Of a stretch of 64,000 nt of DNA, positions 1-38,464 are shown in pieces (positions within the stretch are counted from its first letter, which is position 1; every line of letters begins with the position of its first letter). The notes under the pieces are model-generated. The model did not search any database, was not told where the DNA came from, and worked only from the letters and a program-made list of their open reading frames with translations. The translations under genes and the position numbers were made by a program. The DNA lies in sequence record MK250027.1; one strand, given 5' to 3'.

Positions 1-3000
1 AAAGTTGCACATATAACAATACGTTCTGTTACTGATGAAGCGGAATTAAAAGAAATAAAACAATATCTTCCAAATAATGAATTAATATGGGAAGAAAAGA
101 ATAGTGTTTTATGGATAAAAACAAACAATAAAACAGTACAAATTGGAGGTACTAGTAATTCAAATAATAACGGAAATCAAAATAACAATAATAGTGATAG
201 TATGACACAAGAAGAATTAATAAAAGCCCTTAAGGAAATGGGTATTGTTTATGATTCAAATAATGGGTTAGAATTAGAATAGGCAAAAGTTGAGGACATT
301 ACTTTTATTAATTCTAATTTGACAGACAAATATGTATATTCAATAGATTCAGAAGGAAATCTACATTCTACTATAGTTCCTAAAGTAACATTGAAATCAC
401 GTGTTGCAAATAAAGGCTTATATGAATCAAATAAACCAGGTTCTACATTTACAAGTCGTGGATTCGTCGCAAATCTCGTGTGTGGTGAGAAGAATACGGA
501 ATTAGGAATTGATAATACATTAAGTGCAAGTTCAAATGGTTCAATATTAAATGAATCTGATAGAATTCACATTTCTCAATTTTATGCTCCATTATCAACA
601 GATATAGAAGAAGGTAAAATAGGATGTTCTCATGCATTTATAGAGTTAACAAATACATCTCCATATGATTTCTAGTTAGATGGATGCTATTTGCATTTCT
701 TCTCACTTAATGATACAAATTAGACAACATATTATAATTTACCATTAAAGGGTGTAATTCCTGCAGGTAATACATTTTTGATTAGAGGCAAAAAATATGC
801 TGATTACAAGAATTCCAATGTATTCATTAAGGTAAATTCATTTGATATAGAATGGTTTATAGAAAAAGATCAACTTATAGATTTAACCGTTAATACTATA
901 TATAATGGATATGCACTTGCGTTAACATATGGTAATACAGTAGTAGAAAATGGAGTAGAAACAGAAATTAGTCCAGTAACAACATTAGCAAAAGTAGATA
1001 CAGATAAAACAAACAAATATAGAGATAATTATATTGACGGTATTATATATTCTTATAAAGTTGCTAATATTCCTAATACATATAGAACATGGGCTATATT
1101 TAATTCCGGATATAATGTATTATCTAATAGCTTATTTAGAGAAACATTCTTATTGGACCCATCAAAACAAGGTTATCAAGCATTGAATTCAAATAAGAAG
1201 GATACATCTAGAGTACGTCATGCTACAACAGCAGATTTCTAGTTATTATCTTTAGCAAATGAATTCATACAATTCCCAAAATCTGATTCAGTAAAAGCCG
1301 TTTCTGATTATACACCAAAAGCATCATTTGAACATAAAACAGTTATTACAGAAAAGAGTAATATTGATTTAAATAAACCAAATATGATTACATGTGCGTT
1401 TGGTATTAATATGTTAACAACAAGATGTTTTAACTGGATTTCAGGAGGTATTTTTGATGAATTCATTTGGATTAGAAAGAAAGGTAGTATAACAGCTTGG
1501 AAAGATTGTGTACGATATGAATCTTATACAAGTTCAAAATGTGGTGTTGTTACAGAAAAATCTACTAATGAAATTCAAAAGAAAACATTTAATGTTGATA
1601 ATGAAAAGATAAAGGAATTAAAAGAATGTGTATATGATAGAATAACAGGTATATTTCCTGGTACTACCACACAATATACTGCACATAAGGTAATAGTTAC
1701 ATTACCTACGCCGTCAACTGGCACATCAGAATATGAATATTGCGTTGGACGACCATTATTAGATGGTACACCTGATCCTGATCATACAAATGTATCAGAT
1801 CCATATACATTTACAATGTATGCAAGTTCTTATGTTCCTAGAGTTTATCAAACATCTGACCAACAAGGTTTCCATTGGATTGAATATCAAGTATGGGCTG
1901 GTGCAGCTAAGAAATTAAATGAATACATTAATAATACTAAGAGTACAACATATATGCCAGTATTAGTAAATACTGGTGATATGACTCAATCTGGTTCTCG
2001 TATATCAGAATGGTATGATTATTATGAAGCTGGTAAGTGTTTGTTTAACCATCTTGAACAAATGAATGTTGTTGGTAATAATGACCTTGCAAATATTGAT
2101 CCTACTATATTAGGTACGGGTGATGATGCTGGTAAATCAAATTCATTCTATTTCCATGTATTCTATTGTTATGAAGTTGATGATTTTGAAGGTACTGCTT
2201 ATCCTATCATTAATAAGAAATATATTCCATCATTATATTACTTTGGCACAACAGATTATAGATTCATAATGGTTAACTCAGAAATCACAACAAAATGTTG
2301 TAATGATTGGTTTAATATTGGTAATTATAACATTTATACAGGTTATACTATTGCATCTTCAAATAATACATATAAAACAGATAATACATGGACACCAATT
2401 TATGATAGATTATATGCTATTATGAATAATTTTACAGGTAAACAATTTATAACTGCATGTCATGAAATGCCATTTACCGTTATTACAAAAGCAAATATTA
2501 AGAAAGAAACAAATATATTAGCAGCATAGAGAAGTGCATCTGGTACATCATTGGTAGGTTCTCACTTAAATTCTATAACTGCTGAAGATACAGGTTTTGG
2601 TTTTAATTGGTTTTCAAGATTACTTGAATATTTTGCAAGTAAAGGTAAGACTAAATTATGTATTGGTGGACATAAACATACATATGCTATGACATTCCCT
2701 ATTAGAGAGAATTATACATATACAAATAATGGTGCAACTGTTGATTCAAAAACAACACCTATGCCAATGTCAGCAAATCTTAATAATAAAATTGAGCAAT
2801 CTGTTAAATGGACAAAAAAATATACATATAATGCAGATACCTGTACATTTACAGAAAGTACATCTGGCACAGAAACAGTAAATACAAGTAAATTACCTTA
2901 TATTACAAAAGATGTGAAATCAATGTCTTATAATGGTACAACAACTATTGCACAAGCTGCAAGCGCTATCTAGGGATTCTTACCATATCAATACTTAAAT

Positions 3001-3357
3001 ACGTTAACAACAAGTAATGCAATAACTTATTTAATGTGTTAGGCTACAGGTTATAAATATTCATCAAATAAAGAATTACCTGCATATACATAGGCATTCT
3101 CTGAACTTATACCATAGACAACAGAGGCAGAAAAACCAGCTTCAACATAGAAATTCCCTATGTTTATTGATATTACTTTGAATAATACTACAATTACATT
3201 TAAATTGATAAGTGTTACTAACGTATTTGATTCTGCATATTTGTTTACTCAGCGTACATATGGTACAGAAAATAGTGGATTAAACTATATGAAATTAGGA
3301 TCTAATTCTTTATATGGTACATGGCAAGCGTCATCAACAAATTTAAAGACTCTTTAA
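1..3357 (+). CDS. 5'-truncated large protein with lamin-tail-like domain and calcineurin-like (purple acid phosphatase type) metallophosphoesterase; TAG=Gln
   Basis: Frame 1 is open from base 1 to TAA TAA at 3355 with about ten in-frame TAG, joining track ORFs 319, 778, 1384, 2551 and 3160. LTD-like FIELTNTSPYDFQLDGCYL...GVIPAGNTFLIRG; metallophosphoesterase motifs SDQQ, NTGDMTQ, VGNND, GGHKHTY. Confidence 0.85.
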
Positions 3358-3383
3358 TAAAAATATCAATCTAATATAATAAT

Positions 3384-6300
3384 ATGAAATATAATGGAAC
3401 AGATAATATTATAACTGATAATGACATCCTTGTTACTTCCAGCGCTGGAAGTAACAAGGATCTTCATACAGTTATAGAAGAACAACAATATGACATTGAT
3501 GAATTAAAATCAAATGTCAAATGGATTTATAAATACGGTGGTGTCGGTGGTGTCGGTGGCTCCGGAAGTGGTTCTGTAAGTGGTGGAAAATGGTCTGCAG
3601 ATGTATATATTAATGATGTGCCAGTAACTAATGGTTCTATAACTGATTTATCGCAAAAACTTATTAATGATATAGCTCCTATTACTGTCAAAGTTTCTAT
3701 TAAAAACCCTTCTGCTGGTGGATATAAGTTTAAATTGGAATATGGATATGATGATGGTTCATTCCAAACATATCCTCAATCATTAACAACAGATAATAAT
3801 TGTAGTGTAGAATTTAATCTTAAAATTTCAAAAAATTCACAATTAGTTATAAAAGTAACAGATATAGATAATAATTATAAACAGACGATATATAAGTACT
3901 ATATTTATGGTTTAGATTATAAAATAATTCCAATGACTTATAATAGTCAAGGTGTTTTATATGAACTTAAAGATTTTGATTATAAACCTAGTCAATTTCC
4001 AAATGGTGTTGTTTATAGATTATCAATTAATAATTTCGCTGGATTTATAATTAATTATAATATTGTAAGTACTATTGATTGCAAAATTATATAGATTAAT
4101 GAATAGAATTATAAACTATATAATACAGATAAAAATAATGGTTCATATTATGATAATGAAAATTTAAAAGGTTATTTACAATCAAATGATACTATAATTA
4201 CATTAGATTATTTAATAACGCAAGATACTTTGAAAAATGAACTTAACTTTGGTTCTCAAACATTCATGGCGTATATAGAAAGTATAAGTAATGGTATTTC
4301 AAATAAAAATGAAGTAAAATCAGAATATTCTATTGTGCCTGATAGTAATCAATATGTTATATGTTTATCTGAATCTATTATGGGTAAAGTTTATGATGAT
4401 AATACAAATATTAGCATAGTAGAAGCACAAAAAGAAGGAAATGCGTTTAATGTAGGTGATTCCGTATCATTTAAATTAAGACCATTTAATTTCTCCTCTG
4501 ATACAATTGCAATTAATTATACATTAATTAATACGGAAAATGATATTAATACTTCTAGTACTATAAATTTAAAAGCAGGACGTTATATATCTCAATCATT
4601 TAAAGTATATTCGGGATGGAATAAGTTAATAATTAATACTAATATTGTAAAATATTATTATGGTGTAAAAATTTCAGCTTCTGTAAACTGGTATAATCAA
4701 AACGGTGAAAATAATTCAAAGGCAAAGAATCTAGATTTATCTTATGTTCGTTTTTATAATAGTATATCAGATAATATGAAAAATGAAACCAATTTTAAAT
4801 AGATATATGTCAATAACTATTTAGAATTAAATACTAATATAAATGCATAGGATAAAGTTATTAATTTATATAATAATAAAACGATAAATACAGCTACAAA
4901 AGTAGATACTCACTTTGCATTTAGTATTCAATTCTCAGGGGCTAATAATACAGATGATACTATTTTTGAATTAAAAAATGAAAAGAAAGATATATTATTT
5001 TCTGTAACATAGAGTTCTATTAAATGTAATTAGTTTACTAGTAATAATGATATAAAAATATATATACCAAAAGAAAATAATTATACACCATCTGATGCAA
5101 CTAAATATCATTTAGTTGATATTTATATTAAAAAAACAGATCCATATACATTAACAAAAACAGTTAATAATACAAATTCTGTTGATATGCAATATTATTT
5201 AAATGATTTAGCAGATGATATAGACGTTTCTAATTCTAAAAAAGAACCTCAATATTATATTGAAGTATATATTGATGGTATTACAGATGGTGTTACTAAA
5301 TATTTTGTATCAACATATCCAAATATATGTTATTTATGTTTAAAAAATATAAATGTATCATATAACTTATTTGAATTAGGTAAATTTAATAATGAATCAT
5401 TAAAATTTAATGATATTGACGCAGATTTATATTATTACACATATAAGTATATATTAACTAAAGGAAGTGGTGTTACAAAAAATAATATAGACTTAATATA
5501 TAACTTATCATCATTAGATTATAGTGCATCAATTTCTTCTGATTTAACAAAATAGTTGATATTAAGAAAGCATAATCAAATATGTATATCAAAAGAATAT
5601 TTAGAGCAGTTAAAAAAAATGTTAGATGTGCCTATTTATATAATAAATGTTGCACATACACGAGAGAATGATAATATTACATCTATTTTTTAGTGGTTAA
5701 ATGGAACGTATCAAGAGACTGATGATATTACTGCATGGCCTGTTCAAACGATAAGTGTTCAAGGAAAACATAAAACAGGTATTACGTATGTCGCTCCAGA
5801 TGATACAGTAGGTATAGAAGTTGAGTTTCCTGATGACGATGCATATACATAGGCATTGTTTAATATAAATATTCAAGGTTCATCAACTAGACAAAATCAT
5901 GGTAAAAACTTAGATTTAATCTTGGTTAATAAAGATACAGATACTCATAATAAATTATTATATTCTCCTAATTTTGATGAAAATGATTCAAATACATATT
6001 TACCAGAATCTAAATTTACATTAAAAGCAGATATTGTAGACTCAGGACATTCTAATAATACTGTAATGGGTAAATTTATTAATCAGAATACATAGAAATT
6101 TGATATAGCATCAAATGGACAATATAAAAGTTATATTAAAAACTGTTTGGAAGGATTTCCATGCATAATTATATTAAATGTTGATTATGAAGTTTCGGGT
6201 TCATCTTCTGAATATTATTTCATGGGTTTATATAACTTTAACTTAGGTCGTGGTTCATATTCAAATTTAGGATATGTTAATAATTCTATATTTGATAAAC

Positions 6301-9300
6301 AATTATCATCTGTAACAGCACTTAAACCATTTGAATTTTTTAAAACAACAACAGATGAATATGAATTGAGAACTGATTTTGGATGCGCAGAAATAACAGG
6401 TAATAATCATAAATTTGATTTTTCACAATGGGATGATACTATATTATATCCATTTGAAAATGAACATGGTAATACATATATGTGGGATGATATAGTAACC
6501 AGTTAGGAAGGTGCATTTAAAATCGCATTAAAATATTTCGTAAGAGATATTGCTATTTCTGGAGGTTATATATTTGATTATTTAGGTAAAGAAGCGATAG
6601 ACCATAAAAAATGGGATGCAGATGGTGGATGGAACCATATTGGCGGTGTTCCTGATGTCAGTAAACAATATAAGCGTACATCAGATGATACTACTGTATC
6701 ATATTATGATCCTACCATTAAAGTACCAGAAAAATCTAAATGGCAAACTATATTCCAACGTACAATGTAGGATGGTTTTGAATATAATGGAGATATATCA
6801 TATTCTCGATTAGATTATACATCCGCTGTAGAATATTACACAATTTGTATGGCATTTGGTTTGGTAGACTCTGTATAGAAAAATTTAAATGTTCGTACTT
6901 GGACATTAAATAAAACAAATAGAAAGGAAACAGATCCAGAAGAAAAAGATTTAACACGTTCTAAATTCTATATATCATTCTACGATATGGATACATGTTT
7001 GGGTATCGATAATAACTCTAATGATACAACAACTTTCTGTTTTTCTGATTATTGGGAATCAACTGATACTGAATAGAATGGTGTACATATTATTTCATCT
7101 ATTAATCAATACAGAGATTATTTTTCTGAAAAATATACAATTACTGATGCTTCTACAGGTATAAAATCTGGTGAAATTGGATACGATATACCATCATCAT
7201 TCTTATTTGGTGTCGCAAAATATGGTACAGAAGTATTTAACACAGATGAACTTTTAAAATTAGATTATCTTGAATATCCAACACCTACATTATTATGGAT
7301 AAGATATAGAGCAGGAAATACAACAGCATATGATAAACCTGGTACAGGATCTTTATAGAATGCACAATATTTCATGGATACTTATTATAAAAAACATATG
7401 GAAGGTGTGTCTGAATTAGTATTCAATTTAAATTATAAAGTTAAATATCTTGCATATAATATATAGGAAAAATGGGAATTTGATTCAACAAAGAAGAATA
7501 CCTTTATAGGAACATATACGATAAATAATAAAATTAATTATTCTTCAGGTTTCCATAATGATATACAAAAATTTAGAGGTCGTTCTATATATCGTGTATA
7601 TGATTGGTTAAATTCTAGATTACATATATTAGATGCATATTTTAATTTACAAGATTCACGAGAACTTTTATCTGTATCTGAAATAGAAAAATAGCATCAA
7701 ACAAATAAAAATACCACTAATACAGAACTTGTTCAATTACGTTTATCTGGCAATAACTTGGATGACAGTGTAAAAACTATAGTATCATTATTAAATACTT
7801 CTAATGATATTAACATTAAGAGTCAAATATTTAAATCTAGCACAACAGATAATCCAAAAATTAATTTTCCATCAAATCCTATAACGTTACAAGTTAAAGC
7901 TCAAAATTATTCACCAATAATGTTTGATGTCGGTGGTACAATTCAAGGTAAATATTTATTACGTTCATCTGCAAATACGTATTAGATAACATTTAGCGGT
8001 TCCGGCAATATAGCATTTGCACTTTATGGTTCAAATTAGATAACATATTTAAGTAATGTTACTTGGTATACACCAACATCAATGATAATTGAATCTTCAA
8101 ATCTTACAAATATTTATGGAAATAATCCTACATATAATGTAAGTGTTAATAAATTAATGTCTCCTGCATTATAGAAAATTGAATTAATGGGTTATAATTA
8201 TACGGGTTCATTAGAATTATCAGATATATCTACATATTCAAATTTAAATTTAATTAATATATCAAATACAGGAATAAATTTAAAGGCGACAGATATTAAT
8301 GTATCAACAATAAATGTATCTGGTGTTTCTGCTACAAAATGTGAAATTTCAAGATGTAATAAATTATCATCTTTAAAATTAAGTGAATTAAAAGTAACAG
8401 ATGAATTTTTATTAACTGTTAATTATTCAAGTAATGTATTATTTAATGAAATTGAAGCAAAACGATTCTCAGTTTCTTGCTCAGTTGTAAATTAGAATAA
8501 TACAATAGTTATTGATGGCTCACGTGGTAAATTTTAGACACTTGAAGAATTAACTATCTCTGGTTTTGCAAAAGTATAGATTTATTCTTGTCCAAAATTG
8601 TAGAAAGTTACTATTAGTGAAATTACGTCTGGAGATGATGCAAAAGATATATATTTGAAAGAACTTGCTATTATTAATTGTTGTACAGATAAATTATGTA
8701 CAGAATTTAATGTACTTTCATCTACATCATCAAGTTATGATAAAACATTAGATTTATATTCATTTAAGAAATTATCTAGAATATGCTTCTATGGAACATA
8801 GAATTTTGAACAAGCAATTTTACCAGAAACATTAAATTTGCAAGGTAGTGAATTTGGTAATTGTAAATCATTGAAATATGTAGATATTAAAACAAGTATT
8901 GGTACAAAAGCAAGTAAAATTACTATCAATGGATATGATAAATATGTATTATCTTCATCAGCTAAAAGTACTAGTGGATTAACATTTATTACATATACTG
9001 CACCAAATGTAGGATGTTTCTATAACTGTTATGAATTTAAGATGGAACGTACTGTAAATGATAGTTCAGTTGTACCTATTCGCGTAAGTAATTCCGTAAA
9101 ATCTTTGGAATACTTATTTGGACTTGATTCTCATAATAGTAATATAAATTTAGCAAAAATCTCGAATTTTATAGATAATATTTCTATAAGTAATAGTATT
9201 ACATCTATTAATTATATGTGTATGAATCAAGATGGCATTAAATTATCAAAGGAACAATTTGTCGCAGATGGACCAGATAAAGCAACCTTACACTTAGGTA

Positions 9301-12074
9301 CATTTGGTAAATTATCTAGTGGTAATCTTGTAGATGCATTTTATATTAATACGATATATATTAATAAATGGATATGGTATGATAAAGATAAAAAACAAAT
9401 AATCAGTTGTAATAATATTAATAGATTATTTGGTCAAGGTTCAAAGAATTTATATATGACAATAGATTGTTTATATCCTATACTGAATAAGATCTAGTAT
9501 TTAATTGGAATTACTAGTGGGCAGACGATAATATATCCTATATATTCAGGCTCTTCATAGAAATTTGATGTATATACAATTCTTACAGATGAAAAGAAAA
9601 CAGAAACTTCATGGAAGGATAAAACAACATATACAAAATCTTATACATTTAATGGTACTATTGGTAATTTGATTACGAATCAAGTTGTTCCTGCTCGTGC
9701 CATATTTGTTAATGAAACAGGTGCTTCTCATACAGTAGATTCTCAAGATAATACAGGTGCAATATATCCTACTGCAATGACAAGATTCAGCGGTATTTCA
9801 TTCTGTGCATCTAATGTACAATGGGATTTATATGGATTATTTAGTAAGAAATGGAAATTATAGTATATAGATTTTTTCCAAACATTTGGATTCTCTACAG
9901 TAACAGAATATGAAGATTTATTTAATGCTAAATTTATGCCATCAACATTAATAGATATTAAACATAGTTTAAATACATCATTCAACACATCTGTAGATTA
10001 TACAAGATTCTTAGATTTTAACACATTAATTACTAATTATAATAATTCAGTTCCATCAAATGCAATGTTTAATTACGAAAATGGAGATTCTCTTAATTAT
10101 GCTACAGGATTAACATTTACTAAACATATTAGCAGTGATACATTTAAAGAATGGATGGTATATATATTTAAAGCAAATAATGCTCAAGGTATAACTAACT
10201 TATTCAGAAACTGTAATATATTAGTAAGTCAAGCAGAAGCAAATAATAAATGTGATTTCAGTATAGAAACAATATTTAGCGATTATGGCGAAAATCTCGT
10301 AATAAATTAGAAAATACATAATATATATTGTTTGTTCTATAATTTACATTGTTATATTAAAGATAAGTATGATATAACTAAAACTAGTTAGTCTGCTGAA
10401 GTATAGTATATGACATTTGGTACAGATATGTTTAAATACCTTCCAAATATAACTACTGTTTCATCAGCGTTTACAAATAACTATTGGAATGACCCTATAC
10501 CATTTAATGTATTTAATAAACGTTATAAATGTGATGATACATATTATTATCTTGAATTCTTTGAAGGTACTGATATATTAGTAACTGATGAGAATAAAGG
10601 TCTTAATGAATATAAAGATAAAAAGAAAATAAGAAAGAAGATAAAATATGTTTCATATAGTTATAAATAGGTAATGAATTAGGTTAGTTCATGTTTCGCT
10701 AATATTCATTTTAATCCTGCTTATATTTCTAACAGATATACTAAAGGTTCTGATATTATTAAAGAAGCAGGTATTAATTATTATCAATTTATAAATGATG
10801 ATAACACTGTTATAAATAATGATGAGAAAATATATATTTCTGAAAAAATAAAAGTATTATTACGTTCTACTGGTAATAATAGTGATTATATATACCCATC
10901 ATATGAATATTATGATACATTAAATTTGCATGGTGCATTCTATGAAGGTAATTTTGAAAAAGCCGGCACATCTACTGGTGGTACTAATGTAACGTCTTCT
11001 ATTCAAAAAGCACCATTAACAAAATCAGTATCTGAATATTTAGAATCACTTATAGTTACACCAGATTTATTATATGGATGTCAACCATCTGCTTCAATAT
11101 AGGGTATAGTTTCTCAATCTAGTGTATCAAAAGATATGTTAACTGGTATTTTACCAGCTCATTTCTATAAGCAAATGAAAACATTAGGAGGTGGTACATA
11201 TGAAGTGTTTACAGGATGTCTTGTGATACCAAATTACGTAGGTACATATGTAAATTATGATTCTAACGGAACATTGAAACTTCGTTATAACATATATACA
11301 TTTATACCAGAAGAATTTGTAAATTCTGATATGAATAATTTATAGAATATGTTTAGATTCTATATACATTGGCCAAAACAAGGTCAAACAGAATCAGGTG
11401 TGCAAACATATGATTTTTATGTATTATCTACAAGCAATTCATTTGGAAGTAATATAACGTCATTAAATAATGCATTCCCTGTTTCATCAGTTGTTTCATA
11501 TCAATCATATGGAACTACAATAATAAATTATCAAACAGCTAACAGATCAATTCACTATAATTTACAATGTACATATTAGACTCAATCTTATGAAGCATCA
11601 AAGAAATCAGAGATATTTGGAACACTTAATTATGATAATTTGAGATATATATCAGTGTTTGATACAGGCCTTAATATGGAAATATATAAGTCATTAAATG
11701 TAACTAATTTAATAACAAGTATAAACTTATTATATGGTTACTATGGATATATATTTAACTCTTCATATGATACAAGAAATATAATATTAACAACAAATTC
11801 AGAAAATAAAAAATATTATTGTATTAATGTAAGTGCAAATTATCAATGGCAATCTAATTAGTTATCATGTAATATAATATTCCCTATATGTTCTAACACA
11901 TCAGAAACAACAAGAAGATTATTATATTTCTATGATATTCCATAGAATGCTAAATTTAATACTAACATAAGTATGTTTTCAACTTCAGAAAATAGAGAAT
12001 ATTATAAAAATATGTTTGATAGTATGTTTACATTCAATGATAATGAAAAATATAGTTATGCTACATATGAATAA
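3384..12074 (+). CDS. Giant (2896 aa) probable virion protein with CotH-like kinase domain and LRR-like C-terminal half; TAG=Gln
   Basis: All long + ORFs from 3384 to 11861 share frame 3 and the gaps I translated break only at TAG; ends at TAA 12072-12074. CotH-like motifs IQGSSTRQNHGKN, FTLKADIVDSGHSNN, EGFP...FMGLYNFN, FGLVDS(Q)KNLNVRTW, FYDMDTCLGIDN. Gly-rich linker near the N-terminus; LxxLxLS-type repeats after about 8100. Confidence 0.8.
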
Positions 12075-26622: not shown

Positions 26623-26664
26623 AAAGAGGTATAGAAAATTAAAATTCTATACCTCTTTATTTTT
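26623..26664. terminator. Bidirectional terminator between convergent genes
   Basis: AAAGAGGTATAGAA/TTCTATACCTCTTT with A/T tracts on both sides. Confidence 0.85.
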
Positions 26665-27010
26665 ATTCTTCTTTCTTTTTTCTTGTTCTTCTGACTTTCT
26701 TAGGTTTATTAATGTCAAAATCATTTTCAATTTCATTTATAAATTCATCTATAGATACAACTGCAGCTGGATCATCTATAAATGGGTCTAATTCTAACAT
26801 GAATTGAGCGAAATCATTTCTATCTCTAAGAAATGCGTTTAATCCTCGACCAGAATCATAAACAAATTGAATTATTATATATCCATCGGGATCTTTTAGA
26901 AAACTAAATCCTATTGTTTGTTTCAAATCAACAAATGTCTATCCAACTCTTACAAACGATTTAAATTTTCTATTCTTAAAAAACTCTTCATTTAATTCTA
27001 AATTATCCAT
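26663..27010 (-). CDS. Hypothetical protein (115 aa, one TAG)
   Basis: Track ORF extends through a TAG to ATG 27010 (MDNLELNEEFF...), 1 nt after the upstream gene's stop. Confidence 0.7.
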
Positions 27011-27011
27011 A

Positions 27012-28211
27012 TCATTCAAATAATGCATTTGCTGTTTTTACTGTTCCGTCTGTATTAATGTACTTATCCATACCCTTGAATATTTCTGCTTCAATTGCTT
27101 TCTTCTTATCATAACCTTCATATTGTGTACCTTTAAGCAATATTTGTGATTTAAGATTCCAAAAGCTTTCATTTGGAGTATCATTAATCATATATTCTAG
27201 TGATTCTTTATAATCTTGTATATATTCAGGGAATAATTTACTGTTAAGTTCTACCAATGTACGCTGACGCATTAATCTATCACTAAAATCAATATCATTT
27301 ATATCTCGCTTACAAACTTTTTCAAATACCGGTTTTAATTTTGATTCAGAATCAAGTAAATCTTGAACTGTATTAATACCGCATATTTCACGAACTTTCT
27401 TTTCCTTACTTGGTGTAATTCTTACTTTGCGTCCATCTTTATACCAATTATAAAATGAAGGTACACAATCACCATCGTCACCACAAAATATCTTATCAAG
27501 AACAACATTATTTGGATTCTCTACAGATAATTCCATAATAGTATTTGATTGAAGTAATTGTTTTACATAAGTCTTAGATAAATCTTCATTCTCGAAAAAT
27601 ATATCAAAATTATTATCTGATTTATTATACCATGTTTCAAATGCTTCTGGTACATAAATATAACGTTTACTACCTTTACCCTTACCTGTTGTATTATATA
27701 CTATGCAATATTGATTTGTTACTGTATTGAAATCAATAAGTTGTCTAATATCTGCATCTGCGCTTACAATGATAACATTATAATTTGGATATTTCTCGAA
27801 CACTATTTCTTTACACATACATGCAATATCATCTGCTTCACAATGCTCCACCTTTGCTACATGCATAGAATTCCTTGATAAAATCTTAAGAAGGTCATCT
27901 GAGCATTTAAATATATTATCCCAATTTATAGATTCCGACTTTTTCCTATTTGACTTATAACCAGGATTTATATCATCTCCAGGAAGAACATCTTTTCTCC
28001 ATGCATGTTGAGCGTCTGTTGCTATAATAACATTTGTAGGTTTGAATATATTAAGAATTGAACATACATCTGTTGTAAACTTATACATGAATGAACGTAC
28101 GTCTTCTATTCTGTTATATCCGTTGACCTAACCATATAAGCTATTCATAAATAATGATCTGAATAAAAGGTTAGACCAATCCAATACTAATAATACTTTC
28201 TTACTTTCCAT
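27012..28211 (-). CDS. rnh: 5'-3' exonuclease / T4 RNase H-like flap endonuclease (399 aa, one TAG)
   Basis: Extends through TAG to ATG 28211, restoring the N-terminal LVLDWSNLLFRS motif; also ATDAQHAWRK, GYKSNRK, CEADDI, VSADADIRQL, CGDDGDCVP. Confidence 0.85.
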
Positions 28212-28282: not shown

Positions 28283-29665
28283 TTAAGAATTGTCTGGGAC
28301 AATTTTATACCAATACAAACTATATTTTGATTTTGATGATGTATTTGTATATCCTTTTACTTTTAGCGCATAAGACGCTTTTATATGCAAATGAATTAAA
28401 CCGCCTTCATAATCTGTAGGTATATTTATATTTGGTGATTGAGTATTTACTATATTATTATTACCATCATCCAAAAAATATGATATGCTATCATCAGTAT
28501 ATATATCATTTATAGCTGTTGCATGTTCACTAAAACCATAATTACCTGAACCCTATATAAAAAGTACAGCATCACCTGGTTCATCATTTGCACTATGTAT
28601 TGATATACCATTATCTATTGAGTGTCCAGTTATATCATCATTACCTGTATTATCAGGTATTGCTTTATTTTCTACTGTATAATATACTTTATAATATGTT
28701 ATTAATGATATATCATCTATATCTTTCATTTTTACATCATTTTCAGATAGATTATGTAATTTTGCATATAATGGTATAATTACATCAGTCTTTAATTGAT
28801 AAGCGGATATTCTAAATAATTTATTCCATTTTATAATAGTTCCTAATTTCTAATATAATGTCAAATCACATAATTTTAATGGTTGCTAATTATCTATTAT
28901 ATATTGGTCTTCTTTAGATACCAATTTATCATCATTTATAAATAATGTAGGCATATATTTATTATTAAAATATATTTTCCTACAAGGTAAATTACCACTT
29001 TTTATAACAATATATAATTCACCGGATAATAATTCCTATACAGTTGGTACATATGTTCCATCATACTAAACTGTTTCCTGCCTATCTTCTACATTTGGAT
29101 CTTGTCTTTCTTTATCAATATTAATATATTCATACCCAATTGGCATTATTTCATATGTATCTGCAACAATGTTATTATCTTTATCATCCGCGGTAAAATA
29201 ATATTCTCCATCATAATCTGTATTATTTCTGTTCTTGTCATTTAATGCTTTTATATATTCATATCCATATTCACAAAAAATATCTTCCAAACTTGCTTCA
29301 TTTGCATCTGTTGCAAATGCTTTATTTAATACACAGCCAGAAAACTTATTTATATCAATATCACCAGAATTTATTGTACTTTTATATTTTCGTAATAAAT
29401 CTAAATTATAATAATTATCATCTAATGTATTTTCATCAAAATATGTTTCATTTATCTTTACAATTCTATCTTCTGGTGTTATATCATGTCTATATGTTCC
29501 ATAATTTCTATAATACTCATTGTTTACCATATGTTCATTTGCTGCTATATCTGCAACTTTTTTATTATTTAAATCATATGATAAACGGTCATAACGATTA
29601 AATTCAAATATTTTTGTATATGAATTTAATATTTTTTCATATTCATTATTAACAATATCTGCCAT
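28283..29665 (-). CDS. Hypothetical protein (460 aa, TAG=Gln), possibly structural
   Basis: Track ORFs 29066-29665 and 28283-28474 share a frame; only TAG interruptions were seen between them. Confidence 0.7.
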
Positions 29666-30186: not shown

Positions 30187-32025
30187 TTATGAAAATATTA
30201 TATATTTAACTTTTACAGGAATATCATTAGGATTATATACTAATAAACTCTATAATAAATTTTTAATAGGTAATTGTTTATCATCATCTTTGCCTATTAG
30301 CATATATCCATCACCAACTCTTAGCCATAAATCATTAGAAGAAAGGTATTCCATGTACTTATATAATCCTATGATATTTTCTTTCATTCCGTCATGTGAA
30401 TCAACAAATTTAATATTTGTTTTATTAGGATTATTTTCCCACATATCATTATCTTCACTATTTACATTAGCATCTATATACATATCTGGATTATGATACT
30501 TTATAGATTCACCTTCAAATTGTTGTCGTTCCTAACTTGCAGGAAATCTATAGAAATCATTATTTATATTCTAATTATTATCATAAGCAGGAATATATAA
30601 GTTATCAAAACTATTTGTAAATCCATCATTAGATGAAATGTCATTTAACGGCAAATTATTATAATCTTCTATATATTGTTTCTTTTCATCTGGTATCAAA
30701 GCATTTATTTGAACAGTTGCTAATGCTTTTTCAAATAACATGGTTTTCTTCTATGAACGAATCTAACCACCAAAATATGAATTCAATATAGGTAATGAAA
30801 CAGGTATACAAATCTCTACCTAATCTGCAACATGATTTACCCATAATACACTTGTATCATAATCTTCATCATCAGGCCAATTAGGAATCAAAACAATACC
30901 TCTCATAGATCCATTAGGGTATTTCACGCATCCTATTCTCTTATTTAAATCTTCATAACAATTAGATGGTCCCATTGCATTTTTCATTTTAAATATAAAT
31001 GATTTTATTTCATCTAATATTTTTACAATATCATATATATTATAATAAGAAAAAACTCCTGTAAAATATTTCTTATAAATTTCTGGATACTTCTATATAA
31101 TAATATCATGAAATTTCTTTGAAAATATTAATATACCATTCTATTCAAAACATGGTAAAAAGAATCTCTTTATAACATCTATTTCATATACAAATGTATT
31201 GAAATCATCTAATATAATATCACTTAATTTAAGAAATCCTCTATAAATATCACATTCAATTCTATAATTATTATCAGATGCATTTTTTTCTCCCACTAAT
31301 CTTGGTTTATATTTTTCCAATAAACTGATAATTAAATCTTTTGTTATTTCTGGTTCTACAAAAGGAGAATCTTCAAACTCACCAACTTCGCCTTTATTAT
31401 TTTCGTCATTTCTACATATAGGAATGATTTTCACATTACGAACGATAAAGTCATATCCTTCTTCTGTACTTTCAAAATTAATATAGTCTATTTGTGATTC
31501 TGATGTATCTACATCGTCATAAGTTTTGATTGATATAGAAATAGGTACCTTTAACTTATTTAATTGATTCTGGACCAAAATTACAAATGATCCATAAGTT
31601 TCTCTTACAGTAGATGATTCGACATGAACATTATATTTTTTATTATTCTACTTATAAAGAATATCAAACCCTATATTACAATAACTCTCATAATCTTCTG
31701 TTGTTGATATAATTTCATTAATTAAGAAAAACTATGATTTATATGTTTCTCCATATTCATTTCCCTAAAGGAGATATGCTGAATGCGGTTGGAGAATTTT
31801 TGTCTCAACATTATATTGTGTTATACCAGCGGCATGAATAGTAGACATATCAATAGAAGCTAAAATATCTCCGTTTGAATCTGTTATCTATCCTTGTGAA
31901 CCTGATATATCAAATGATGTATCATCTTCATTTATAGAAGATGAACACTTATAACCTGAATCTGCTACACTGTTATCTCTTGAATATAATTGATAAAATA
32001 AATTCTTATTCTTTGTTGTTGCCAT
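30187..32025 (-). CDS. Hypothetical, probably structural protein (612 aa, TAG=Gln)
   Basis: Translated continuously from ATG 32025 (MATTKNKNLFYQLY) to TAA 30187 with only TAG interruptions; preceded by the 17-mer. Confidence 0.75.
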
Positions 32026-32067: not shown

Positions 32068-32101
32068 AAAATGGAACCTATATTAAAATAAGTTCCATTT
32101 T
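32068..32101 (-). terminator. Intrinsic terminator after the tape-measure-like gene
   Basis: AAAATGGAAC/GTTCCATTTT stem. Confidence 0.6.
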
Positions 32102-32111
32102 ATATAATATA

Positions 32112-35100
32112 TTATGCATTTTTAAAGAAACCGTCTATTGTAGTATTTTTAAAATAGAATGTAACTCTACCTTGCATAGGCATATTATTACCGTAATAAT
32201 TATTGTTTGTATTACCTGATCTATTTGGTTGATGAACACCTCGTTGTTGAGTAACAGCTCTATTACCTGGTTGAACAACTTGATGTTGCTATGTATTACC
32301 TTGTGACTTATTAGTATTACTTGGTGTATTTGTAGTAATAAGGTCAAGTAATTCTCTAATACCATCAAATCTACTAAGAATCTTATTCTCATCAAGACTT
32401 TCAAACGCAAATCGCATTCTATCTACTGCAGTCGCTATATTATTAACTTTATTAGCAAACTCTTGCAACGCTTGATTACGTTTCTTTTCATTATTAATAA
32501 TCTAATCATCTAATGCTTTAAGCGCTTTACGAGCAGATTCAAGCTTTGTCGTATATATTTCTACTTTAGATGTTGTTACCTAAATCTAAGATGTAAATGT
32601 TTTTAACCTTGATGTATAAGTTCTTAATGAACCAGAAGTTACGTTCATATTTCTGTTTATTTCAGGAGACGTTAATCTCTTTATATTATTAATGAACATA
32701 TCAATATGAAGACCTAACTATTTCTAACTATTCATTTCTCTTGAAAGATATATCATCTTCTCTGCAATTTCAAGATAAAGATCCATAAACTAACCTGTTG
32801 TTTGAAAATTAACTTTTTCTGAATTATTAGATAATGATCTCATCTATGATTCCATCTTTGTTAATACAGTTCCGAACTAAGATACAATGGATGATGGTTT
32901 AACTTTATCATTATATGTAAGTTGATTTATAATCTTTCTATATACACTGGCAATCTGATAAACGCCATCTACGAATTTCTTTGCATCTTTTGTACTCTAT
33001 ATAGATGTTTCGAATATCTTACTTGAGTTACTGAAATATGTTGCTAACTATGTCAATACAGATGTAAATTTAGTCGCAACTTCACTACCTTGTGATAATA
33101 CTTTCCCTTGATCATCTGTCATCGCTTTGATAATTTTAGATAAAGAATCTACTGATTTTTTAATAGTTCCCATTACCTACATAACTATTTTTGCAGTTGA
33201 TTGAATCTTATTATATTTCTCCATATTTTCTTTAGTAGAAAGATTATCAGAAATAATAGTAATAAAATCTACAAATGCATTAGCGATATTTTTAGATATT
33301 GTTCTAATAAAATTAGGTTGTAAACACAAATAATCTTTAGACTATGCCGTTGTTCCTTTCTTATTAGATGTTAATCCTAAGAATGGTTTTAATGTTGCTG
33401 AGAAATTTTTAACTGCAGTCATTATAGGATTTATAGTATTCTTTATAATATCTGCTATTGATTCTGCTTTTTCTATAAAACCTTCATTTGCAAAACTTTG
33501 TACAAGATAATTTATAAATTCTACAAACATTCTGCCAACTTCTCTTGCAGCCTATGTAAATGCTCCTTTTTTAAGTTTCTTAGTAATAGGTATTAATTTA
33601 CCATCTTTATCTTTTTCATAATGATCTACATAAACGCCGGTAGCTAACTTTAATATTGCATCTACATATTTTCCTAATCCTTCCATAACAGGTCCAACAG
33701 AACCACCTATTGCATTTAATGCATCCTCTGTTTTATTTCCCCAAAAAGAACCATGTCTTTCAAATACTGTAACTAACTCATCTATAAAAATACCAAATGT
33801 AGTTGCTACCGAAATAGCTGCATTTAAGAAGTCATCCGGTGTTACTTTAGCTAAATGTGGAACTGTATAATTACCGTCTTTATCTTGCATATAGTAATCT
33901 GTATATGTTCCTGTTGCTAGTTTCATTATTGCATCAACAAATTTACTAACACCATCCATAATAGGCATAATAGAATCTTTCATTGCATCCATTGCCCATA
34001 TCATATTAGGTTGTAATTGTTTAAATGATGTCCCAAGCTATTCTATAAAATTACCAAATGAAGCTGATACAAATATAGCAGATGTAAAGAATATAGAAGG
34101 GTCAACCTATTCATATTCAGGTTTACCATTTTTATCATATCCTGTTACTATTTGCATCGTTGCAACTTTAATAACTGTATCAACAAATTTAGAAACTGCA
34201 TCCATAACGGGTTCCATTACCTATCCAACAGTAGATATTGCTAACATTGCATTAACTGACATCTTATCAAACGCGTCACTTAAACATTGTAAAAATATGC
34301 TAAACTATACAGATATAGCAAGAGCTGCGTTACTAAATTCTGTTGCTGTTAATTTCTTATATATTGGGTTCTTCTTATTATCATATCCTATAATATATGT
34401 TCCTGTTGCTAGTTTCATTACAACATCTACAAATTTTCCAACAGTATCAATAATAGGATTAAGCGCTAATGTTAACACGCTTAATACAACAAGTTTTAAA
34501 GCAACCATTGCGTTAAATCCGGCACTTAATTTAGAAATAAATGTTGTAAATCCATTTGTAACTGCTTCTGCTGCCTATTCAAATACAGTTGCTGGTAAAT
34601 GTTCATACATAGGTTTACCATTATCATCATATCCTGCTATATAATTCATTGTAGCAACTTTCATTATAATATCAATATATTTTGATATTGTATTTAATAT
34701 AGGTCTTAATGCTAATGAAATAACTAATGCCATTGCAGTTCCATTAAAACCGCTAAATGCTTTAACAATAGCTTGCATAGATCCTAAAACACTATTTTTA
34801 TCATCATTACCTTTACCTATCATCAATTCAGAAAATGTTTGAATCATCTTAGCATTACATATTTCTGTTATATATTTCATCTCAGAAACAGTTAATGCTA
34901 ATACACCAAATACTGCCATAATAATAGGTGAAAAAGCTGCTGCCGCTGTTGCCTATACCATCTATACAGGATTTGGAGCTGCTGCTTTTATAACATCAAA
35001 CATTACTTCAAATAATGTTACTGCAGTCTCCCCTGTTTTTTTAAGTTTCTCAGTATTATATGGTAACATTAATTCCAACGCTTTCATGAATAATATCATG

Positions 35101-38081
35101 GTTCCTGTTACAACAGTCATCACACCTGCAATTGCCGTCATTACTACAGCACCTAATGTAATAAATGGAAGAATAGGCGTCATCGCACCTAATGCAGTCA
35201 TAAATGTTCCCATAATAGTTAACAAACCTATCATTGTAGCTGCACCTAAAAATACTGCGCCACCTTTATTTAAATCATCAATTTTCTTTGCTTCCCATGC
35301 GAATAAAACCATTGTTCCTCCAACAATATCCATCACTGCACCAATAGCGGACATAACAATACCACCTATAATAGTATCTGGTAAAAATTTCTCTAATTTA
35401 GAAACACCGTACATTACCAAACCCATTAGACCTAAAACACCTGCCATAACAGCAGCACCTAAAAATACTGCACCACCTTCATTTAATTCTAATATTTTCT
35501 TAGATTCTATTGCAAATGCTAAACATGCAGTCCCTATTACTAACATAACTATTGCAACTGCAGTCATAATAACTGCACCAACTGCTAATTCAACTGCATA
35601 CTTATCTGCGAATTTTCCTATAAAGAATAATACAGTTCCAAATATCGCTAATGTTCCTATCACAACACCTGCACCTATTAATGCGTCGTCCCACATTTTA
35701 CCAATAGGAATCAATATATCTTTAACAATCAATGATATACCTAATAAAATAAATGCCATTGCCGCTGTTGCAAATATTGCATATGCTGCTTTCTTACCAT
35801 CTACTTTAGCCAAGAAATAAGTACCTGCAATAAGAGTAATAATAATGAATAATGTAATACCCATTCCTATACCTGCTTCTTTACCATTCTAACCTATAGG
35901 AATAAGTAAATCTTTTGTAATCAATGCAATACCCATATAAATAATTGCAAGAGTAGCAGTAGCAAGAACACCCCATAAGGCTTTCTTTCCATTTACCATA
36001 TTCAATACATAAACGCCTGCAACTAATCCTGCTATTATAAACATTGTTACTATTGCACCTAAATAAACTTCCGGCGCTTTCTTTCCAATAGGTATTAAAA
36101 ACGCAACAGATATAATAGCAACCAATGCAAACACAGCAGATATTTTAATAAGATTATTTACCCCTCTATCTATACGTTTACCATGTTTATCTAATGATTT
36201 AACTGCAAATATGCCTAATGCTATAATAAAAGATATAACCAACGCACCTTTTGATACATCATCTAATCTCTTGCCAATAGGTGCCAATAATGTTGCTGAC
36301 ACCAAAGCTATAATTGCAAATACAGCAGAAATCTTTAACATTGCATCTGTAGCGTATGTTAATTTCTTATTACCTATTTTAGACAATTTATTAACAATGA
36401 AAATAGTTCCTGCAGTAAATAATGTAAGTATTCCTATAGATGCAAGTATAGTTTCCGTACTATTATTTTTAACAGTTAACGATAATAATAACATTGATAC
36501 AGATAATGACATAATCATTATTCCAATACCAGTTAAAACACCCTGTACATTTTTAAGGCTCTTATCTAATTTCTTCTCTGATAAATCTTCTATCAAACTC
36601 TTAAATCCAGAAACAGCAACTCTCATAACAATTAAACTTGCTACAACTGCAGTTAATCCAACAATCTTAGTTACAATAGATAATCCTATAATAATACCGC
36701 CTATCATACCTATTGCTGAACTTAAACTTCTTATTATCACCTATGCTCCTTTTACATCTTTAACTTTTAATTTTTTAGCTAAATCTGTAATAGTATTCTT
36801 CATGAATTTAATCAAATACCTAACTACTAAAACAGATTCAATTATTGTTTTAAAAGATGTTAGCTTAATAGTTAATGCAATGAATACAATACCGTATAAT
36901 AATGTTTTCAATGCATTATTCCATGCATTCATAAAAGATGATAAAACTTTAACTTGTTTTACATCCCATTTTTCTTTTAATATTGTGTTAAAGAAATCTA
37001 CTATTTTCTATGCACGTTTCTGTGTTAATGATTTTACAGCAAACATGAAATTAAGAATCTATATCTTCTTAATATCAAATATTACATTTAATAGCTATAC
37101 CATACTATTAACAGTTTGTGCAACCGTTTTATTATCTGGTATTTCCGTTGCAAATGCGACAAAGAAACTCGCAAGCATTTTAGCAGTAATAGGATTCAAT
37201 ACCTTCATTACTTTAAATATAGAAAACTTCTATTCAGGATCTGCTATCTTTACTAAAGGATCTAATATACCACCAATATATTTAACGTTCTCACTTATTT
37301 CTTTTCCTTTTAAATATTTAGCGATCTATCCTATGAACTAACCTAATTGTCTGCCTAATAACCAACCTCTTATAGGATTAAGACTTATCTACATTTTAAA
37401 AACATTTGATGTTACCAATGCGGATAATCCTCCCATCAAGTCTCCAATGGGTTTAATTATTTTTTGAATATCTTTATTTTTTAATTTCGTTTTACTAATA
37501 GACGAAACTAATGCAGATATAAATTTGCCTAAACGTTGTGCAGTTTTAACATCAAGCTTCCCAATATTTTCCTATAACTTAATCATATCAAGAGCAACAA
37601 GTTTGGACATTGTTTCAACAACTGCTTTAATTATACCGACACTTCGTCCTACTGATTTAGAATTCTATATTGTTAACCCTTGTATAAAATCAACTATTTT
37701 TTTTGCGCCTTCTGCATTTATTTCTGTCATTTTATTAATAGCTTTCAGAAAACTATCAATATTTGTAAATGTATTGTCATCAACTTTAAGACTTGATAAA
37801 ACTGTATTTACATTTCCTATAGATGTGGCAACTTTATTCAAAACATCATTGTCAATCTATTCCATGGATACAAGTCCTTTTGACAACTTCTCCAACTATT
37901 CTCCAACAGTTGCTGCTGATTCCTCTTTAGCAGTCTCAACGATACCCTATAACAAACTGATTATAGTAGAATCAGCTTTCTGTTCAATAGTTTCTTTCTT
38001 TTTCTCCTATTGCTGACTTACCATAGTGTCCAAAATATTAAATATACCGTTAAGTGCTTCTTCTGAAGACATTTGTGCCAT
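32112..38081 (-). CDS. Tape-measure-like protein (1989 aa, TAG=Gln) with long hydrophobic segment and internal repeats
   Basis: Track fragments 33342-36932 share one frame; ATG 38081 (MAQMSSEEALNG) to TAA 32112. Mostly helical, Ala/Ile/Leu-rich, with a multi-TM-like region at about 34900-36750. Confidence 0.7.
33380..34720 (-). repeat. Five repeats of about 85-90 aa in the tape-measure-like protein
   Basis: P[IV]xxx[IV]xK[FY][VI]Dxx[MIL]K[LV]AT...[GH]Y[DE]xxxxPxY...FxxAA...FxxF; e.g. PILNTISKYIDIIMKVATMNYIAGYDDNGKPMY, PIIDTVGKFVDVVMKLATGTYIIGYDNKKNPIY, PVMEGLGKYVDAILKLATGVYVDHYEKDKDGKL. Confidence 0.8.
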
Positions 38082-38104
38082 ATCGTTTTAATGTAATTTA
38101 ATTT

Positions 38105-38464
38105 TTACTTAGATGTTGTTTTCTTCTTCTGAACAACATAAACAGATTTATCTTTTAATGATTTTACTGTATATATAATACCGGAGTTTTTATCATATAA
38201 TGTTCCATATTCATAAGCCTTATTATTGTCACCATCTTTAATAGATGTTTTTATCCATTTATCATATTGAGGTAATGAATCTGACATAATTAAAGAATCT
38301 AATTGAGTAGAATTTAATGTATCATTATTCATTGTACGTACGGATGTAATAGCAACTGAATATACAGAATCTTTTACCTAATTATTATTCTTTGTACCAC
38401 ATGAATTAAATGATACCATAAGGCTCAATAAAGAACCAACTAAAATATACTTTAAACTTTTCAT
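38105..38464 (-). CDS. Predicted lipoprotein (119 aa, one TAG)
   Basis: TAG read-through gives MKSLKYILVGSLLSLMVSFNS-CGTKNNN(Q): basic N-region, hydrophobic core, Cys lipobox. Confidence 0.7.

What the first reader, a model, noticed from the sequence alone, without database searches (positions are those of the whole stretch)
1..38464. TAG is reassigned to Gln (genetic code 15)
Seen: dozens of track fragments fuse into single-frame genes of up to 2896 codons broken only by TAG. Every gene end I checked is TAA or TGA, and TAG falls in Gln-expected motif positions (RLKQLQTG). Known: code 15 is described in Lak megaphages of Prevotella and other gut phages. Standard annotation would miss or shatter most of the left half.
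Basis: partly seen in the sequence, partly recalled or inferred. Interest (0 to 1): 0.65.

Follow-up and report, generated by a model that had tools for sequence, protein, structure and literature searches.

The report
Known TAG-to-glutamine recoding, Lak-B8 megaphage

Summary
Confirmed, and already known. Window 1-25000 is 100% identical to Prevotella phage Lak-B8 (MK250027.1, 434001-459000). That genome's own paper reports code 15, TAG-free regions and TAG-rich structural regions.

- **Open frames:** with TAG as sense, 54 fragments in 1-38464 fuse into 13 frames. Coding density rises from 0.64 to 0.97. Making TGA or TAA sense instead gives only 0.70 and 0.79. The largest frame has 2896 codons, 38 TAG, and no TAA or TGA before its TAA stop. 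The longest such run in shuffled sequence is 211 codons.
- **Residue identity:** orthologues in Lak-A1 and Lak-C1 align end to end through the TAGs. Where the partner has a sense codon it is Gln in 64 of 143 cases. Gln beats Glu by 247 bits.
- **Machinery:** the Lak-B8 record has a tRNA with anticodon CUA and a tRNA-Gln-like acceptor stem. It also has a TAG-free RF2 gene. No GlnRS match was found.

- The cited RLKQLQTG motif lies at 52851-52874, outside the stated interval, in a MUG113/T5orf172 gene with 6 TAGs.
- A second recoded gene lies at 43780-44922.
- The minus-strand genes of 38.5-64 kb avoid TAG entirely, so use of the code is mosaic.

The parts
1..3357 (+). 3' part (1118 codons) of a gene that starts upstream of the window. 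It has 10 in-frame TAG and ends in TAA.
   Evidence: It is 86% identical over all 1118 residues to residues 406-1522 of a Lak-A1 frame. Pfam gives only weak LTD and Metallophos matches, below the cut-offs.
3384..12074 (+). Giant gene of 2896 codons with 38 in-frame TAG, ending in TAA. Function unknown.
   Evidence: It aligns end to end at 68% identity with a 2871-codon Lak-A1 frame. No significant Pfam or PHROG match.
12170..16745 (+). One gene of about 1525 codons with 18 in-frame TAG. In Lak-B8 it is split into 12170-12853 and 12783-16745 by a 2-base (TA) deletion near 12832. It encodes a long helical-repeat protein.
   Evidence: It is a single 1537-codon frame in Lak-A1 and Lak-C1. The indel was located. 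TAG positions come, leaving out the overlapped ends of the two frames. Pfam Apolipoprotein repeat 3.9e-24, just under the cut-off. PHROG tape-measure 6e-6.
16847..18505 (+). Gene of 552 codons with 2 TAG, ending in TAA. It is a helical-repeat paralogue of its neighbours.
18791..26605 (+). Giant gene of 2604 codons with 19 TAG, ending in TAA. It encodes a helical-repeat protein.
   Evidence: Pfam Apolipoprotein 2.7e-29, six stretches. 63% identical end to end to Lak-A1 and Lak-C1. It also matches the 12783-16745 protein's orthologue at 21-23% identity, so the two are paralogues.
26663..27028 (-). Gene of 121 codons with 1 TAG.
   Evidence: 88% identical to Lak-A1.
27012..28211 (-). 5'-3' exonuclease (FEN-like) gene of 399 codons. 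Its 1 TAG is at codon 28, inside the conserved N-terminal domain.
   Evidence: Pfam 5_3_exonuc_N 1.4e-15, residues 7-164. TAG position. 93% identical to Lak-A1.
28283..29665 (-). Gene of 460 codons with 5 TAG.
30187..32025 (-). Gene of 612 codons with 12 TAG.
   Evidence: 81% identical to Lak-A1.
32112..38081 (-). Giant gene of 1989 codons with 36 TAG, ending in TAA.
   Evidence: tblastn covers 100% of it in all 15 Lak records, at 70-74% identity in Lak-A and Lak-C.
38105..38464 (-). Gene of 119 codons with 1 TAG. It is the last gene of the contiguous recoded block.
43780..44922 (+). It runs opposite to the surrounding TAG-free genes.
   Evidence: Homologues in Lak-A and Lak-C at 37-38% identity, E 7e-45. 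Pfam Lcl_C 1.3e-4, below the cut-off.
52752..53093 (+). Recoded gene outside the interval: 113 codons, 6 TAG, with a MUG113/T5orf172 (GIY-YIG-like) domain. It holds the motif RLKQLQTG at 52851-52874 with both Q written TAG.
   Evidence: Pfam MUG113 1.3e-17 with Q and 5.8e-16 with X. It is the only copy in the genome, with 4 TAG inside the domain.
38571..64000 (.). Block of mostly small genes that avoid TAG both as sense and as stop. The 30 minus-strand genes hold 5490 codons and 2 TAG, both in doubtful N-terminal stretches. The block includes ClpP (44969-45649), a DSP-like phosphatase (45642-46142) and a polynucleotide kinase/phosphatase (49880-50821).
   Evidence: 65 TAG are expected at the left-half rate and 2 are seen, Poisson P 1.3e-25.

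Best explanation
The window is positions 434001-498000 of the 551,627-bp genome of Prevotella phage Lak-B8. In this phage UAG is translated as glutamine (NCBI table 15).

Shown here:
- A subset of genes carries in-frame TAG at about 1.2% of codons. In this window it is the 38-kb block of giant genes plus two isolated genes.
- These frames are conserved through the TAGs in other Lak clades.
- TAG alternates with CAA and CAG between orthologues.
- The genome holds a tRNA with anticodon CUA that shares U1-A72, G2-C71, G3-C70 and A73 with the phage's own tRNA-Gln genes.
- The genome holds a TAG-free release factor 2 gene. RF2 reads UAA and UGA but not UAG.

Inferred:
- The CUA tRNA is charged by the host's glutaminyl-tRNA synthetase, because no match to the GlnRS catalytic-domain family was found in the phage.
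- Genes free of TAG can be translated as soon as the DNA enters a standard-code Prevotella cell.
- TAG-rich genes yield full-length protein only once the suppressor tRNA has built up.
- The literature holds that the TAG-rich genes are mostly structural.
For: - **Identity of the window:** 100% identity over window 1-25000 to MK250027.1 434001-459000.
- **Frames:**. Density rises from 0.64 to 0.97 with TAG as sense; the TGA-sense and TAA-sense controls give 0.70 and 0.79.
- **Chance:**. Observed run 2899 codons, longest in 100 shuffles 211.
- **Conservation through TAG:**
- **Codon partners of B8 TAG in Lak-A1:** TAG 43, CAA 17, CAG 16, AAA 9, GAA 8. CAA is two mutations from TAG, so this reflects selection on the residue and not mutational nearness.
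- **Likelihood over 143 sites:** Q -425 bits, E -672, K -744, Y -1152.
- **Pfam test on the T5orf172 gene with each of 20 residues at TAG:** Q has the best summed score, 111.5 bits. E scores 110.6, N 109.9, Y 102.1, L 93.4 and W 83.8.
- **tRNA-CUA:** at record 415017-415088, 61.7 bits to RF00005, closest to tRNA-Gln(UUG). It is 95% conserved in Lak-A1 and Lak-C1, against about 76% for the DNA of window 1-23890.
- **RF2:** prfB 402 bits against prfA 216, GGQ present, no TAG.
- **Published for this genome and clade:** PMC6784885, PMC8346664, bioRxiv 10.1101/2021.08.26.457843.
Against: - No peptide evidence exists for Lak phages in anything I could reach. The meaning of TAG is inferred from alignments and from the tRNA.
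- The Pfam residue scan cannot separate Q from E or N.
- No tRNA lies in the window itself. The tRNA and RF2 are 19 kb and 141 kb upstream of the window.
- The late-gene reading is weak within this window. The giant proteins have no secure function, and a replication or repair type gene, the 5'-3' exonuclease, also carries a TAG.
- How host RF1 is kept from ending translation at UAG is unknown.
Confidence: 0.95

Rival explanations
1. TAG is not a constitutively reassigned codon but a conditional one. Early in infection it stops translation through host RF1. Later, once the phage tRNA-CUA and RF2 have built up, it is read as Gln. In-frame TAGs would then act as a timer that holds back a set of genes. 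This refines the main explanation and does not contradict it.
For: - TAG use is strongly two-sided. It is 1.18% of codons in the left block and 0.04% in 30 minus-strand genes of the right half, P 1.3e-25.
- The first 50 kb of the genome shows the same mix of TAG-free and TAG-rich genes.
- RF2 and its neighbours on the same strand are TAG-free.
- The model is proposed in 10.1101/2021.08.26.457843.
- TAG-free regions and TAG-rich structural regions are described in PMC6784885.
Against: - There are no timing data.
- The same preprint notes that in Lak most DNA replication genes are also in the alternative code.
- In the window a 5'-3' exonuclease has a TAG at codon 28.
- The tRNA-CUA gene sits just downstream of a TAG-rich frame, 8 TAG in 253 codons.
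Confidence: 0.4
2. TAG is a sense codon but stands for a residue other than Gln. Candidates are Glu, Lys, Tyr, Trp, Leu or pyrrolysine.
For: - ARAGORN labels any CUA tRNA 'Pyl'.
- In the Pfam residue scan E and N score nearly as well as Q.
- E and K are the next commonest partners of TAG.
Against: - Q is 247 bits better than E and more than 700 bits better than Y or W.
- E and K are also the commonest replacements of ordinary CAA and CAG codons in the same alignments.
- The tRNA shares its acceptor stem and discriminator base with the phage's tRNA-Gln genes.
- Y, W and L score 9 to 28 bits worse in the Pfam scan.
Confidence: 0.02
3. The TAGs are real stops. On this view the left half is a field of pseudogenes, or gene fragments created by assembly or sequencing error.
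For: None beyond the fact that table 11 breaks the frames. One real frame break does exist in this genome, the 2-base deletion near 12832.
Against: - TAA and TGA are absent from frames of up to 2896 codons, while they make up 5-15% of codons in the other two frames.
- 43 TAG positions are conserved between Lak-B8 and Lak-A1, which are about 76% identical in DNA, and the protein alignment continues on both sides of each TAG.
- Nine independently assembled Lak-B genomes share the frames.
Confidence: 0.01

Closest known systems
Lak megaphages of Prevotella, genetic code 15 (Devoto et al. 2019, PMC6784885; Crisci et al. 2021, PMC8346664)
   Same: It is the same object. The window is 100% identical to Lak-B8. 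The papers report low coding density under code 11, TAG read as Q, a CTA suppressor tRNA, RF2, large TAG-free regions, TAG-rich structural regions, and a universal TTA-anticodon tRNA with no sign of TAA recoding.
   Different: Nothing of substance. The GenBank records carry no annotation. The gene coordinates, the TAG counts per gene and the 2-base deletion in one Lak-B8 gene are details that I did not see in the passages I read.
TAG-recoded crAss-like and other gut phages (Borges et al., bioRxiv 10.1101/2021.08.26.457843; Peters et al. 2022, PMC9523058)
   Same: TAG is read as Gln in phages of standard-code Bacteroidota hosts. They have suppressor tRNAs, and recoded codons are concentrated in a subset of genes.
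   Different: They are unrelated lineages with much smaller genomes. [quoted passage not shown] No such evidence was available for Lak.
NCBI translation table 15 (Blepharisma nuclear code)
   Same: The same codon table: TAG is Gln, and TAA and TGA are stops.
   Different: From established knowledge, it is a genome-wide nuclear code of a ciliate. Here the code belongs to a virus that must impose it on a host cell using the standard code, and many of its genes avoid TAG altogether.
Amber suppressor tRNA-Gln (supE type) of Escherichia coli
   Same: From established knowledge, it is a tRNA of glutamine identity with anticodon CUA that GlnRS charges and that inserts Gln at UAG. The Lak tRNA has U1-A72, G2-C71, G3-C70, G10 and U35, as read from the sequence.
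   Different: supE gives partial read-through in a genome where TAG remains a stop. Here TAG is never seen as a gene end in the window, and it occurs 159 times in frame in the genes listed under parts. Charging of the Lak tRNA was not tested.

Membership tests
Phage with stop codon TAG reassigned to Gln (code 15) | Long conserved reading frames interrupted only by TAG, never by TAA or TGA | tested here: met
   Orthologous frames in Lak-A1 and Lak-C1 align through the TAGs.
Phage with stop codon TAG reassigned to Gln (code 15) | Coding density is restored by freeing TAG in particular, and not by freeing another stop codon | tested here: met
   Density goes from 0.64 to 0.97 for TAG, to 0.70 for TGA and to 0.79 for TAA.
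Phage with stop codon TAG reassigned to Gln (code 15) | TAG is not used as a gene terminator | tested here: met
   All right-half ORFs of 150 aa or more have identical 3' ends under table 11 and under TAG=Q. The 50 tiled genes end in TAA (42) or TGA (8).
Phage with stop codon TAG reassigned to Gln (code 15) | TAG columns align with Gln in homologues | tested here: met
   64 of 143 sense partners are Q, and Q is 247 bits ahead of E. The Pfam residue scan puts Q first, but only narrowly.
Phage with stop codon TAG reassigned to Gln (code 15) | The genome encodes a suppressor tRNA with anticodon CUA | tested here: met
   It is not in the window. It lies in the same genome record at 415017-415088, has a Gln-like acceptor stem, and is conserved in Lak-A1 and Lak-C1.
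Phage with stop codon TAG reassigned to Gln (code 15) | Peptides show Gln at TAG positions | not testable with these tools
   No proteomic data could be reached. Metaproteomic support exists only for crAss-like phages (PMC9523058, abstract).
Lak megaphage clade | Sequence identity to a curated Lak genome | tested here: met
   100% over 25 kb to Lak-B8, 99.4-100% to seven listed Lak-B genomes, and about 76% to Lak-A.
Lak megaphage clade | Phage-encoded release factor 2 | tested here: met
   PCRF domain 1.3e-49. prfB 402 bits, above its 370-bit cut-off. Best PDB matches are RF2.

The most novel reading that the evidence does not exclude
The mosaic of TAG-free and TAG-rich genes could be a working code switch, with more parts than the published tRNA-CUA and RF2 pair. 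The conserved tRNA with anticodon UUA could help read UAG by wobble. The phage RF2, which has SPY where the RF2s of E. coli solved in the PDB have SPF, could have a changed stop-codon preference. The two recoded genes set against the strand of the TAG-free block (43780-44922 and 52752-53093) would then be late-expressed islands. The evidence here excludes none of this and shows none of it.
Probability: 0.15. Interest if true: 0.45.

Novelty: already known. Interest (0 to 1): 0.1.

Why it matters
For the scan, it shows that a reader working from raw sequence can recognise a stop-codon reassignment and name the right phage group. For annotation, the GenBank records of all 15 Lak genomes carry no features. 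A table-11 gene caller would break the left 38 kb into about 54 pieces. Biologically it adds nothing to what was published in 2019-2021 for this same genome.

Tried and rejected
- **Whole genome for the Python box:** not held. I worked through the public record by handle instead.
- **tRNA in the window:** none.
- **Rfam families in the window:** none at the gathering score.
- **Function of the recoded genes:** Pfam and PHROGs leave nearly all of them without one. The only matches are helical-repeat, weak tape-measure and 5'-3' exonuclease.
- **Residue opposite the exonuclease's TAG in solved structures:** the sequence search of solved structures with TAG written X found nothing.
- **The protein-atlas search:** I did not resend them there or send them to any other outward tool. 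No fold or atlas evidence on the giant proteins was therefore obtained.
- **Phage-encoded GlnRS:** no match to the catalytic-domain family PF00749.
- **More copies of the MUG113/T5orf172 gene, to compare TAG and Q among paralogues:** only one copy exists.
- **Not used:** the large protein searches, structure prediction, complex prediction and the read tools. The claim did not depend on them.
- **The N run at 56200-56633:** left as it is. No locus I fetched covers the corresponding stretch of any Lak genome.
Full report
**What the window is.** A megablast of window 1-25000 against the phage records gave 100% identity over the full length to Prevotella phage Lak-B8, MK250027.1, positions 434001-459000. 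Identity was 99.4-100% to six other Lak-B genomes and about 76% to Lak-A. The window is therefore positions 434001-498000 of the 551,627-bp circular genome assembled from baboon faeces. That genome is described in Devoto et al. 2019, where B8 is named as the largest genome of the study (PMC6784885). None of the Lak records carries any annotation.

**The observation.**
- Under table 11 the left 38 kb holds only short ORFs, the longest 822 aa.
- With TAG read as a residue, the same DNA gives frames of 1118 (open at the window's start), 2896, 1320, 552 and 2604 codons on the + strand. On the - strand it gives frames of 121, 399, 460, 612, 1989 and 119 codons.
- A simple greedy tiling of ORFs of 60 aa or more raises coding density in 1-38464 from 0.640 (54 pieces, median 97 aa) to 0.967 (13 pieces, median 552 aa). 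Freeing TGA gives 0.696 and freeing TAA gives 0.793, so the effect is specific to TAG.
- In 3384-12074 the reading frame holds 38 TAG, no TGA and only its terminal TAA. The two other frames hold 158 and 423 TAA+TGA.
- The longest TAA/TGA-free run in the left half is 2899 codons. In 100 shuffles the mean is 128 and the maximum 211.

**Is TAG translated, and as what?** I fetched the orthologous 43 kb of Lak-A1 and Lak-C1.
- Every left-half frame aligns end to end with one frame there, at 53-93% protein identity, straight through the TAGs (also for the 1989-codon gene in all 15 Lak records).
- In well-aligned columns the 126 Lak-B8 TAGs face, in Lak-A1, TAG 43 times, CAA 17, CAG 16, AAA 9 and GAA 8. 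The rest are scattered. Ordinary CAA and CAG codons of Lak-B8 face CAA 86, TAG 31, CAG 27, GAA 21 and AAA 15. TAG thus behaves as a synonym of the Gln codons. CAA is two mutations from TAG, which argues for selection on the residue and against mutational nearness.
- I counted both directions and left out TAG-TAG pairs. The 143 sense partners are then Q 64, E 16, K 15, S 10 and N 9, down to Y 2 and W 1.
- I scored these partners against the substitution pattern of each of the 20 residues in the same alignments. This gives Q -425 bits, E -672, K -744, Y -1152 and W -1130.

**A test outside the Lak clade.**
- RLKQLQTG exists with both Q written TAG, but at 52851-52874 on the + strand.
- It lies in a 113-codon frame, 52752-53093, with six TAGs.
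- That frame matches Pfam MUG113 (1.3e-17) and T5orf172 (4.2e-12). It still matches with X at the TAGs (5.8e-16), so the match does not depend on assuming Q.
- I placed each of the 20 residues at the TAGs in turn. Q has the best summed score (64.6 + 46.9 bits). E (64.7 + 45.9) and N (64.2 + 45.7) follow closely. Y, L, W and other hydrophobic residues are 9-28 bits worse.
- This test agrees with Gln and excludes the near-cognate candidates Tyr, Trp and Leu. It does not on its own separate Q from E or N.

**The machinery.**
- The window has no tRNA.
- A search of the whole Lak-B8 record with the Rfam tRNA model gave 34 matches, mostly in two clusters at 125-140 kb and 423-426 kb.
- ARAGORN finds a tRNA with anticodon CUA at 415017-415088, 19 kb upstream of the window. 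It also finds a tRNA with anticodon UUA at 346509-346580, and tRNA-Gln genes with UUG and CUG.
- Among 30 phage tRNAs, the CUA tRNA is closest to tRNA-Gln(UUG). It shares U1-A72, G2-C71, G3-C70 and discriminator A73 with both tRNA-Gln genes.
- It is 95% identical in Lak-A1 and Lak-C1, with the anticodon kept. Those two genomes have a second CUA tRNA about 830 bases away.
- A 378-codon TAG-free gene at record 291973-293109 is a release factor 2. It scores prfB 402 bits against prfA 216, has GGQ, and its best PDB matches are RF2.
- No match to the glutaminyl/glutamyl-tRNA synthetase catalytic-domain family was found. Charging by the host enzyme is therefore inferred, as the literature also assumes.

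**Mosaic use.** The recoding does not fill the window.
- The 12 left-half genes of 100 aa or more hold 146 TAG in 12,335 codons (1.18%).
- The 30 minus-strand genes of 38.5-64 kb hold 2 TAG in 5490 codons. Both lie in doubtful N-terminal stretches. 65 are expected at the left-half rate, P 1.3e-25.
- None of these genes ends in TAG either. They read the same under both codes.
- Two genes on the opposite strand inside this block are recoded. One is 43780-44922, with 380 codons, 7 TAG, a C-terminal end resembling the Lcl C-terminal domain, and homologues in Lak-A and Lak-C at 37-38% identity. The other is the MUG113/T5orf172 gene.
- The first 50 kb of the genome shows the same mix of TAG-free and TAG-rich genes.
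- This pattern is published. Devoto et al. describe large TAG-free regions and TAG-rich regions that hold most structural genes. Borges et al. propose that recoding delays late genes.
- In this window the late or structural reading rests only on weak hints: helical-repeat proteins with faint tape-measure matches. A 5'-3' exonuclease also carries a TAG, at codon 28.

**Comparison with what is known.** Everything above is already reported for this clade and this genome.
- Code 15, confirmed with the FACIL code-inference tool, and the TAG-free regions: PMC6784885.
- The CTA suppressor tRNA, RF2, Q as the aligned residue in 75-85% of cases, and a TTA-anticodon tRNA in 51 of 51 Lak genomes with no sign of TAA recoding: PMC8346664.
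- RF2 in Lak and the code-switch model: 10.1101/2021.08.26.457843.

The finding is a correct rediscovery.

**Limits.**
- No peptide evidence for Lak was available.
I sent them nowhere else afterwards, so the giant proteins remain without a fold-level annotation.
- The N run at 56200-56633 was left untouched, and no fetched locus covers its counterpart in any Lak genome.

**Verdict.**
- Observation: confirmed.
- Interpretation: supported, with corrected boundaries.
- Novelty: already known.
- Interest: low.

Noticed in passing
window 12170-16745, break near 12832: The frames 12170-12853 and 12783-16745 are one 1537-codon gene in Lak-A1 and Lak-C1. Lak-B8 lacks two bases (TA in ...ACATCTATACTC...) that Lak-B1 and Lak-B5 have. 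The gene is therefore frame-shifted in this genome only, either as a strain variant or as an assembly slip.
   Followed up: yes
window 52752-53093 (+): A MUG113/T5orf172 (GIY-YIG-like) gene has the highest TAG density in the window, 6 in 113 codons. It runs against the strand of the surrounding TAG-free genes and overlaps a 134-codon minus-strand ORF (52498-52902) that has no family match. It is the only copy in the genome. It may be a homing-endonuclease-like insert.
   Followed up: partly
window 43780-44922 (+): A recoded 380-codon gene (7 TAG) with a C-terminal end resembling the Lcl C-terminal domain lies in the TAG-free block on the opposite strand. Its Lak-A and Lak-C homologues (37-38% identity) lie at quite different places in those genomes.
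   Followed up: partly
window 38571-64000: The 30 minus-strand genes avoid TAG both as sense and as stop (2 in 5490 codons, 65 expected). The block includes ClpP (44969-45649), a dual-specificity-phosphatase-like protein (45642-46142) and a polynucleotide kinase/phosphatase (49880-50821).
   Followed up: yes
Lak-B8 record 346509-346580 (L017:1501-1573), outside the window: A tRNA with anticodon UUA, which would pair with the stop codon UAA, is 97-98% conserved in Lak-A1 and Lak-C1. Yet TAA ends most genes and never occurs inside the long frames. It is reported as universal in Lak (PMC8346664) and unexplained there too.
   Followed up: partly
Lak-B8 record 291973-293109 (L034:1408-2544), outside the window: The phage RF2 has SPY where the solved E. 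coli RF2 chains it aligns with have SPF, the tripeptide that reads the stop codon. I did not check whether this changes its specificity or how common it is.
   Followed up: no
window 12783-16745, 16847-18505, 18791-26605: These three neighbouring genes are paralogues of one another, with 20-26% identity across many offset alignments. They are built of long helical repeats that match the Pfam Apolipoprotein model. They are a family of giant repeat proteins of unknown role.
   Followed up: partly
L039 and L040 (Lak-C1, Lak-A1) against L013 (Lak-B8): Lak-A1 and Lak-C1 have two CUA-anticodon tRNA genes about 830 bases apart. In Lak-B8 only one was detected in the whole record. The stretch upstream of it holds a 253-codon frame with 8 TAG.
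   Followed up: no
window 56200-56633: A run of 434 N. It was left as it is, in line with the operators' note.
   Followed up: no
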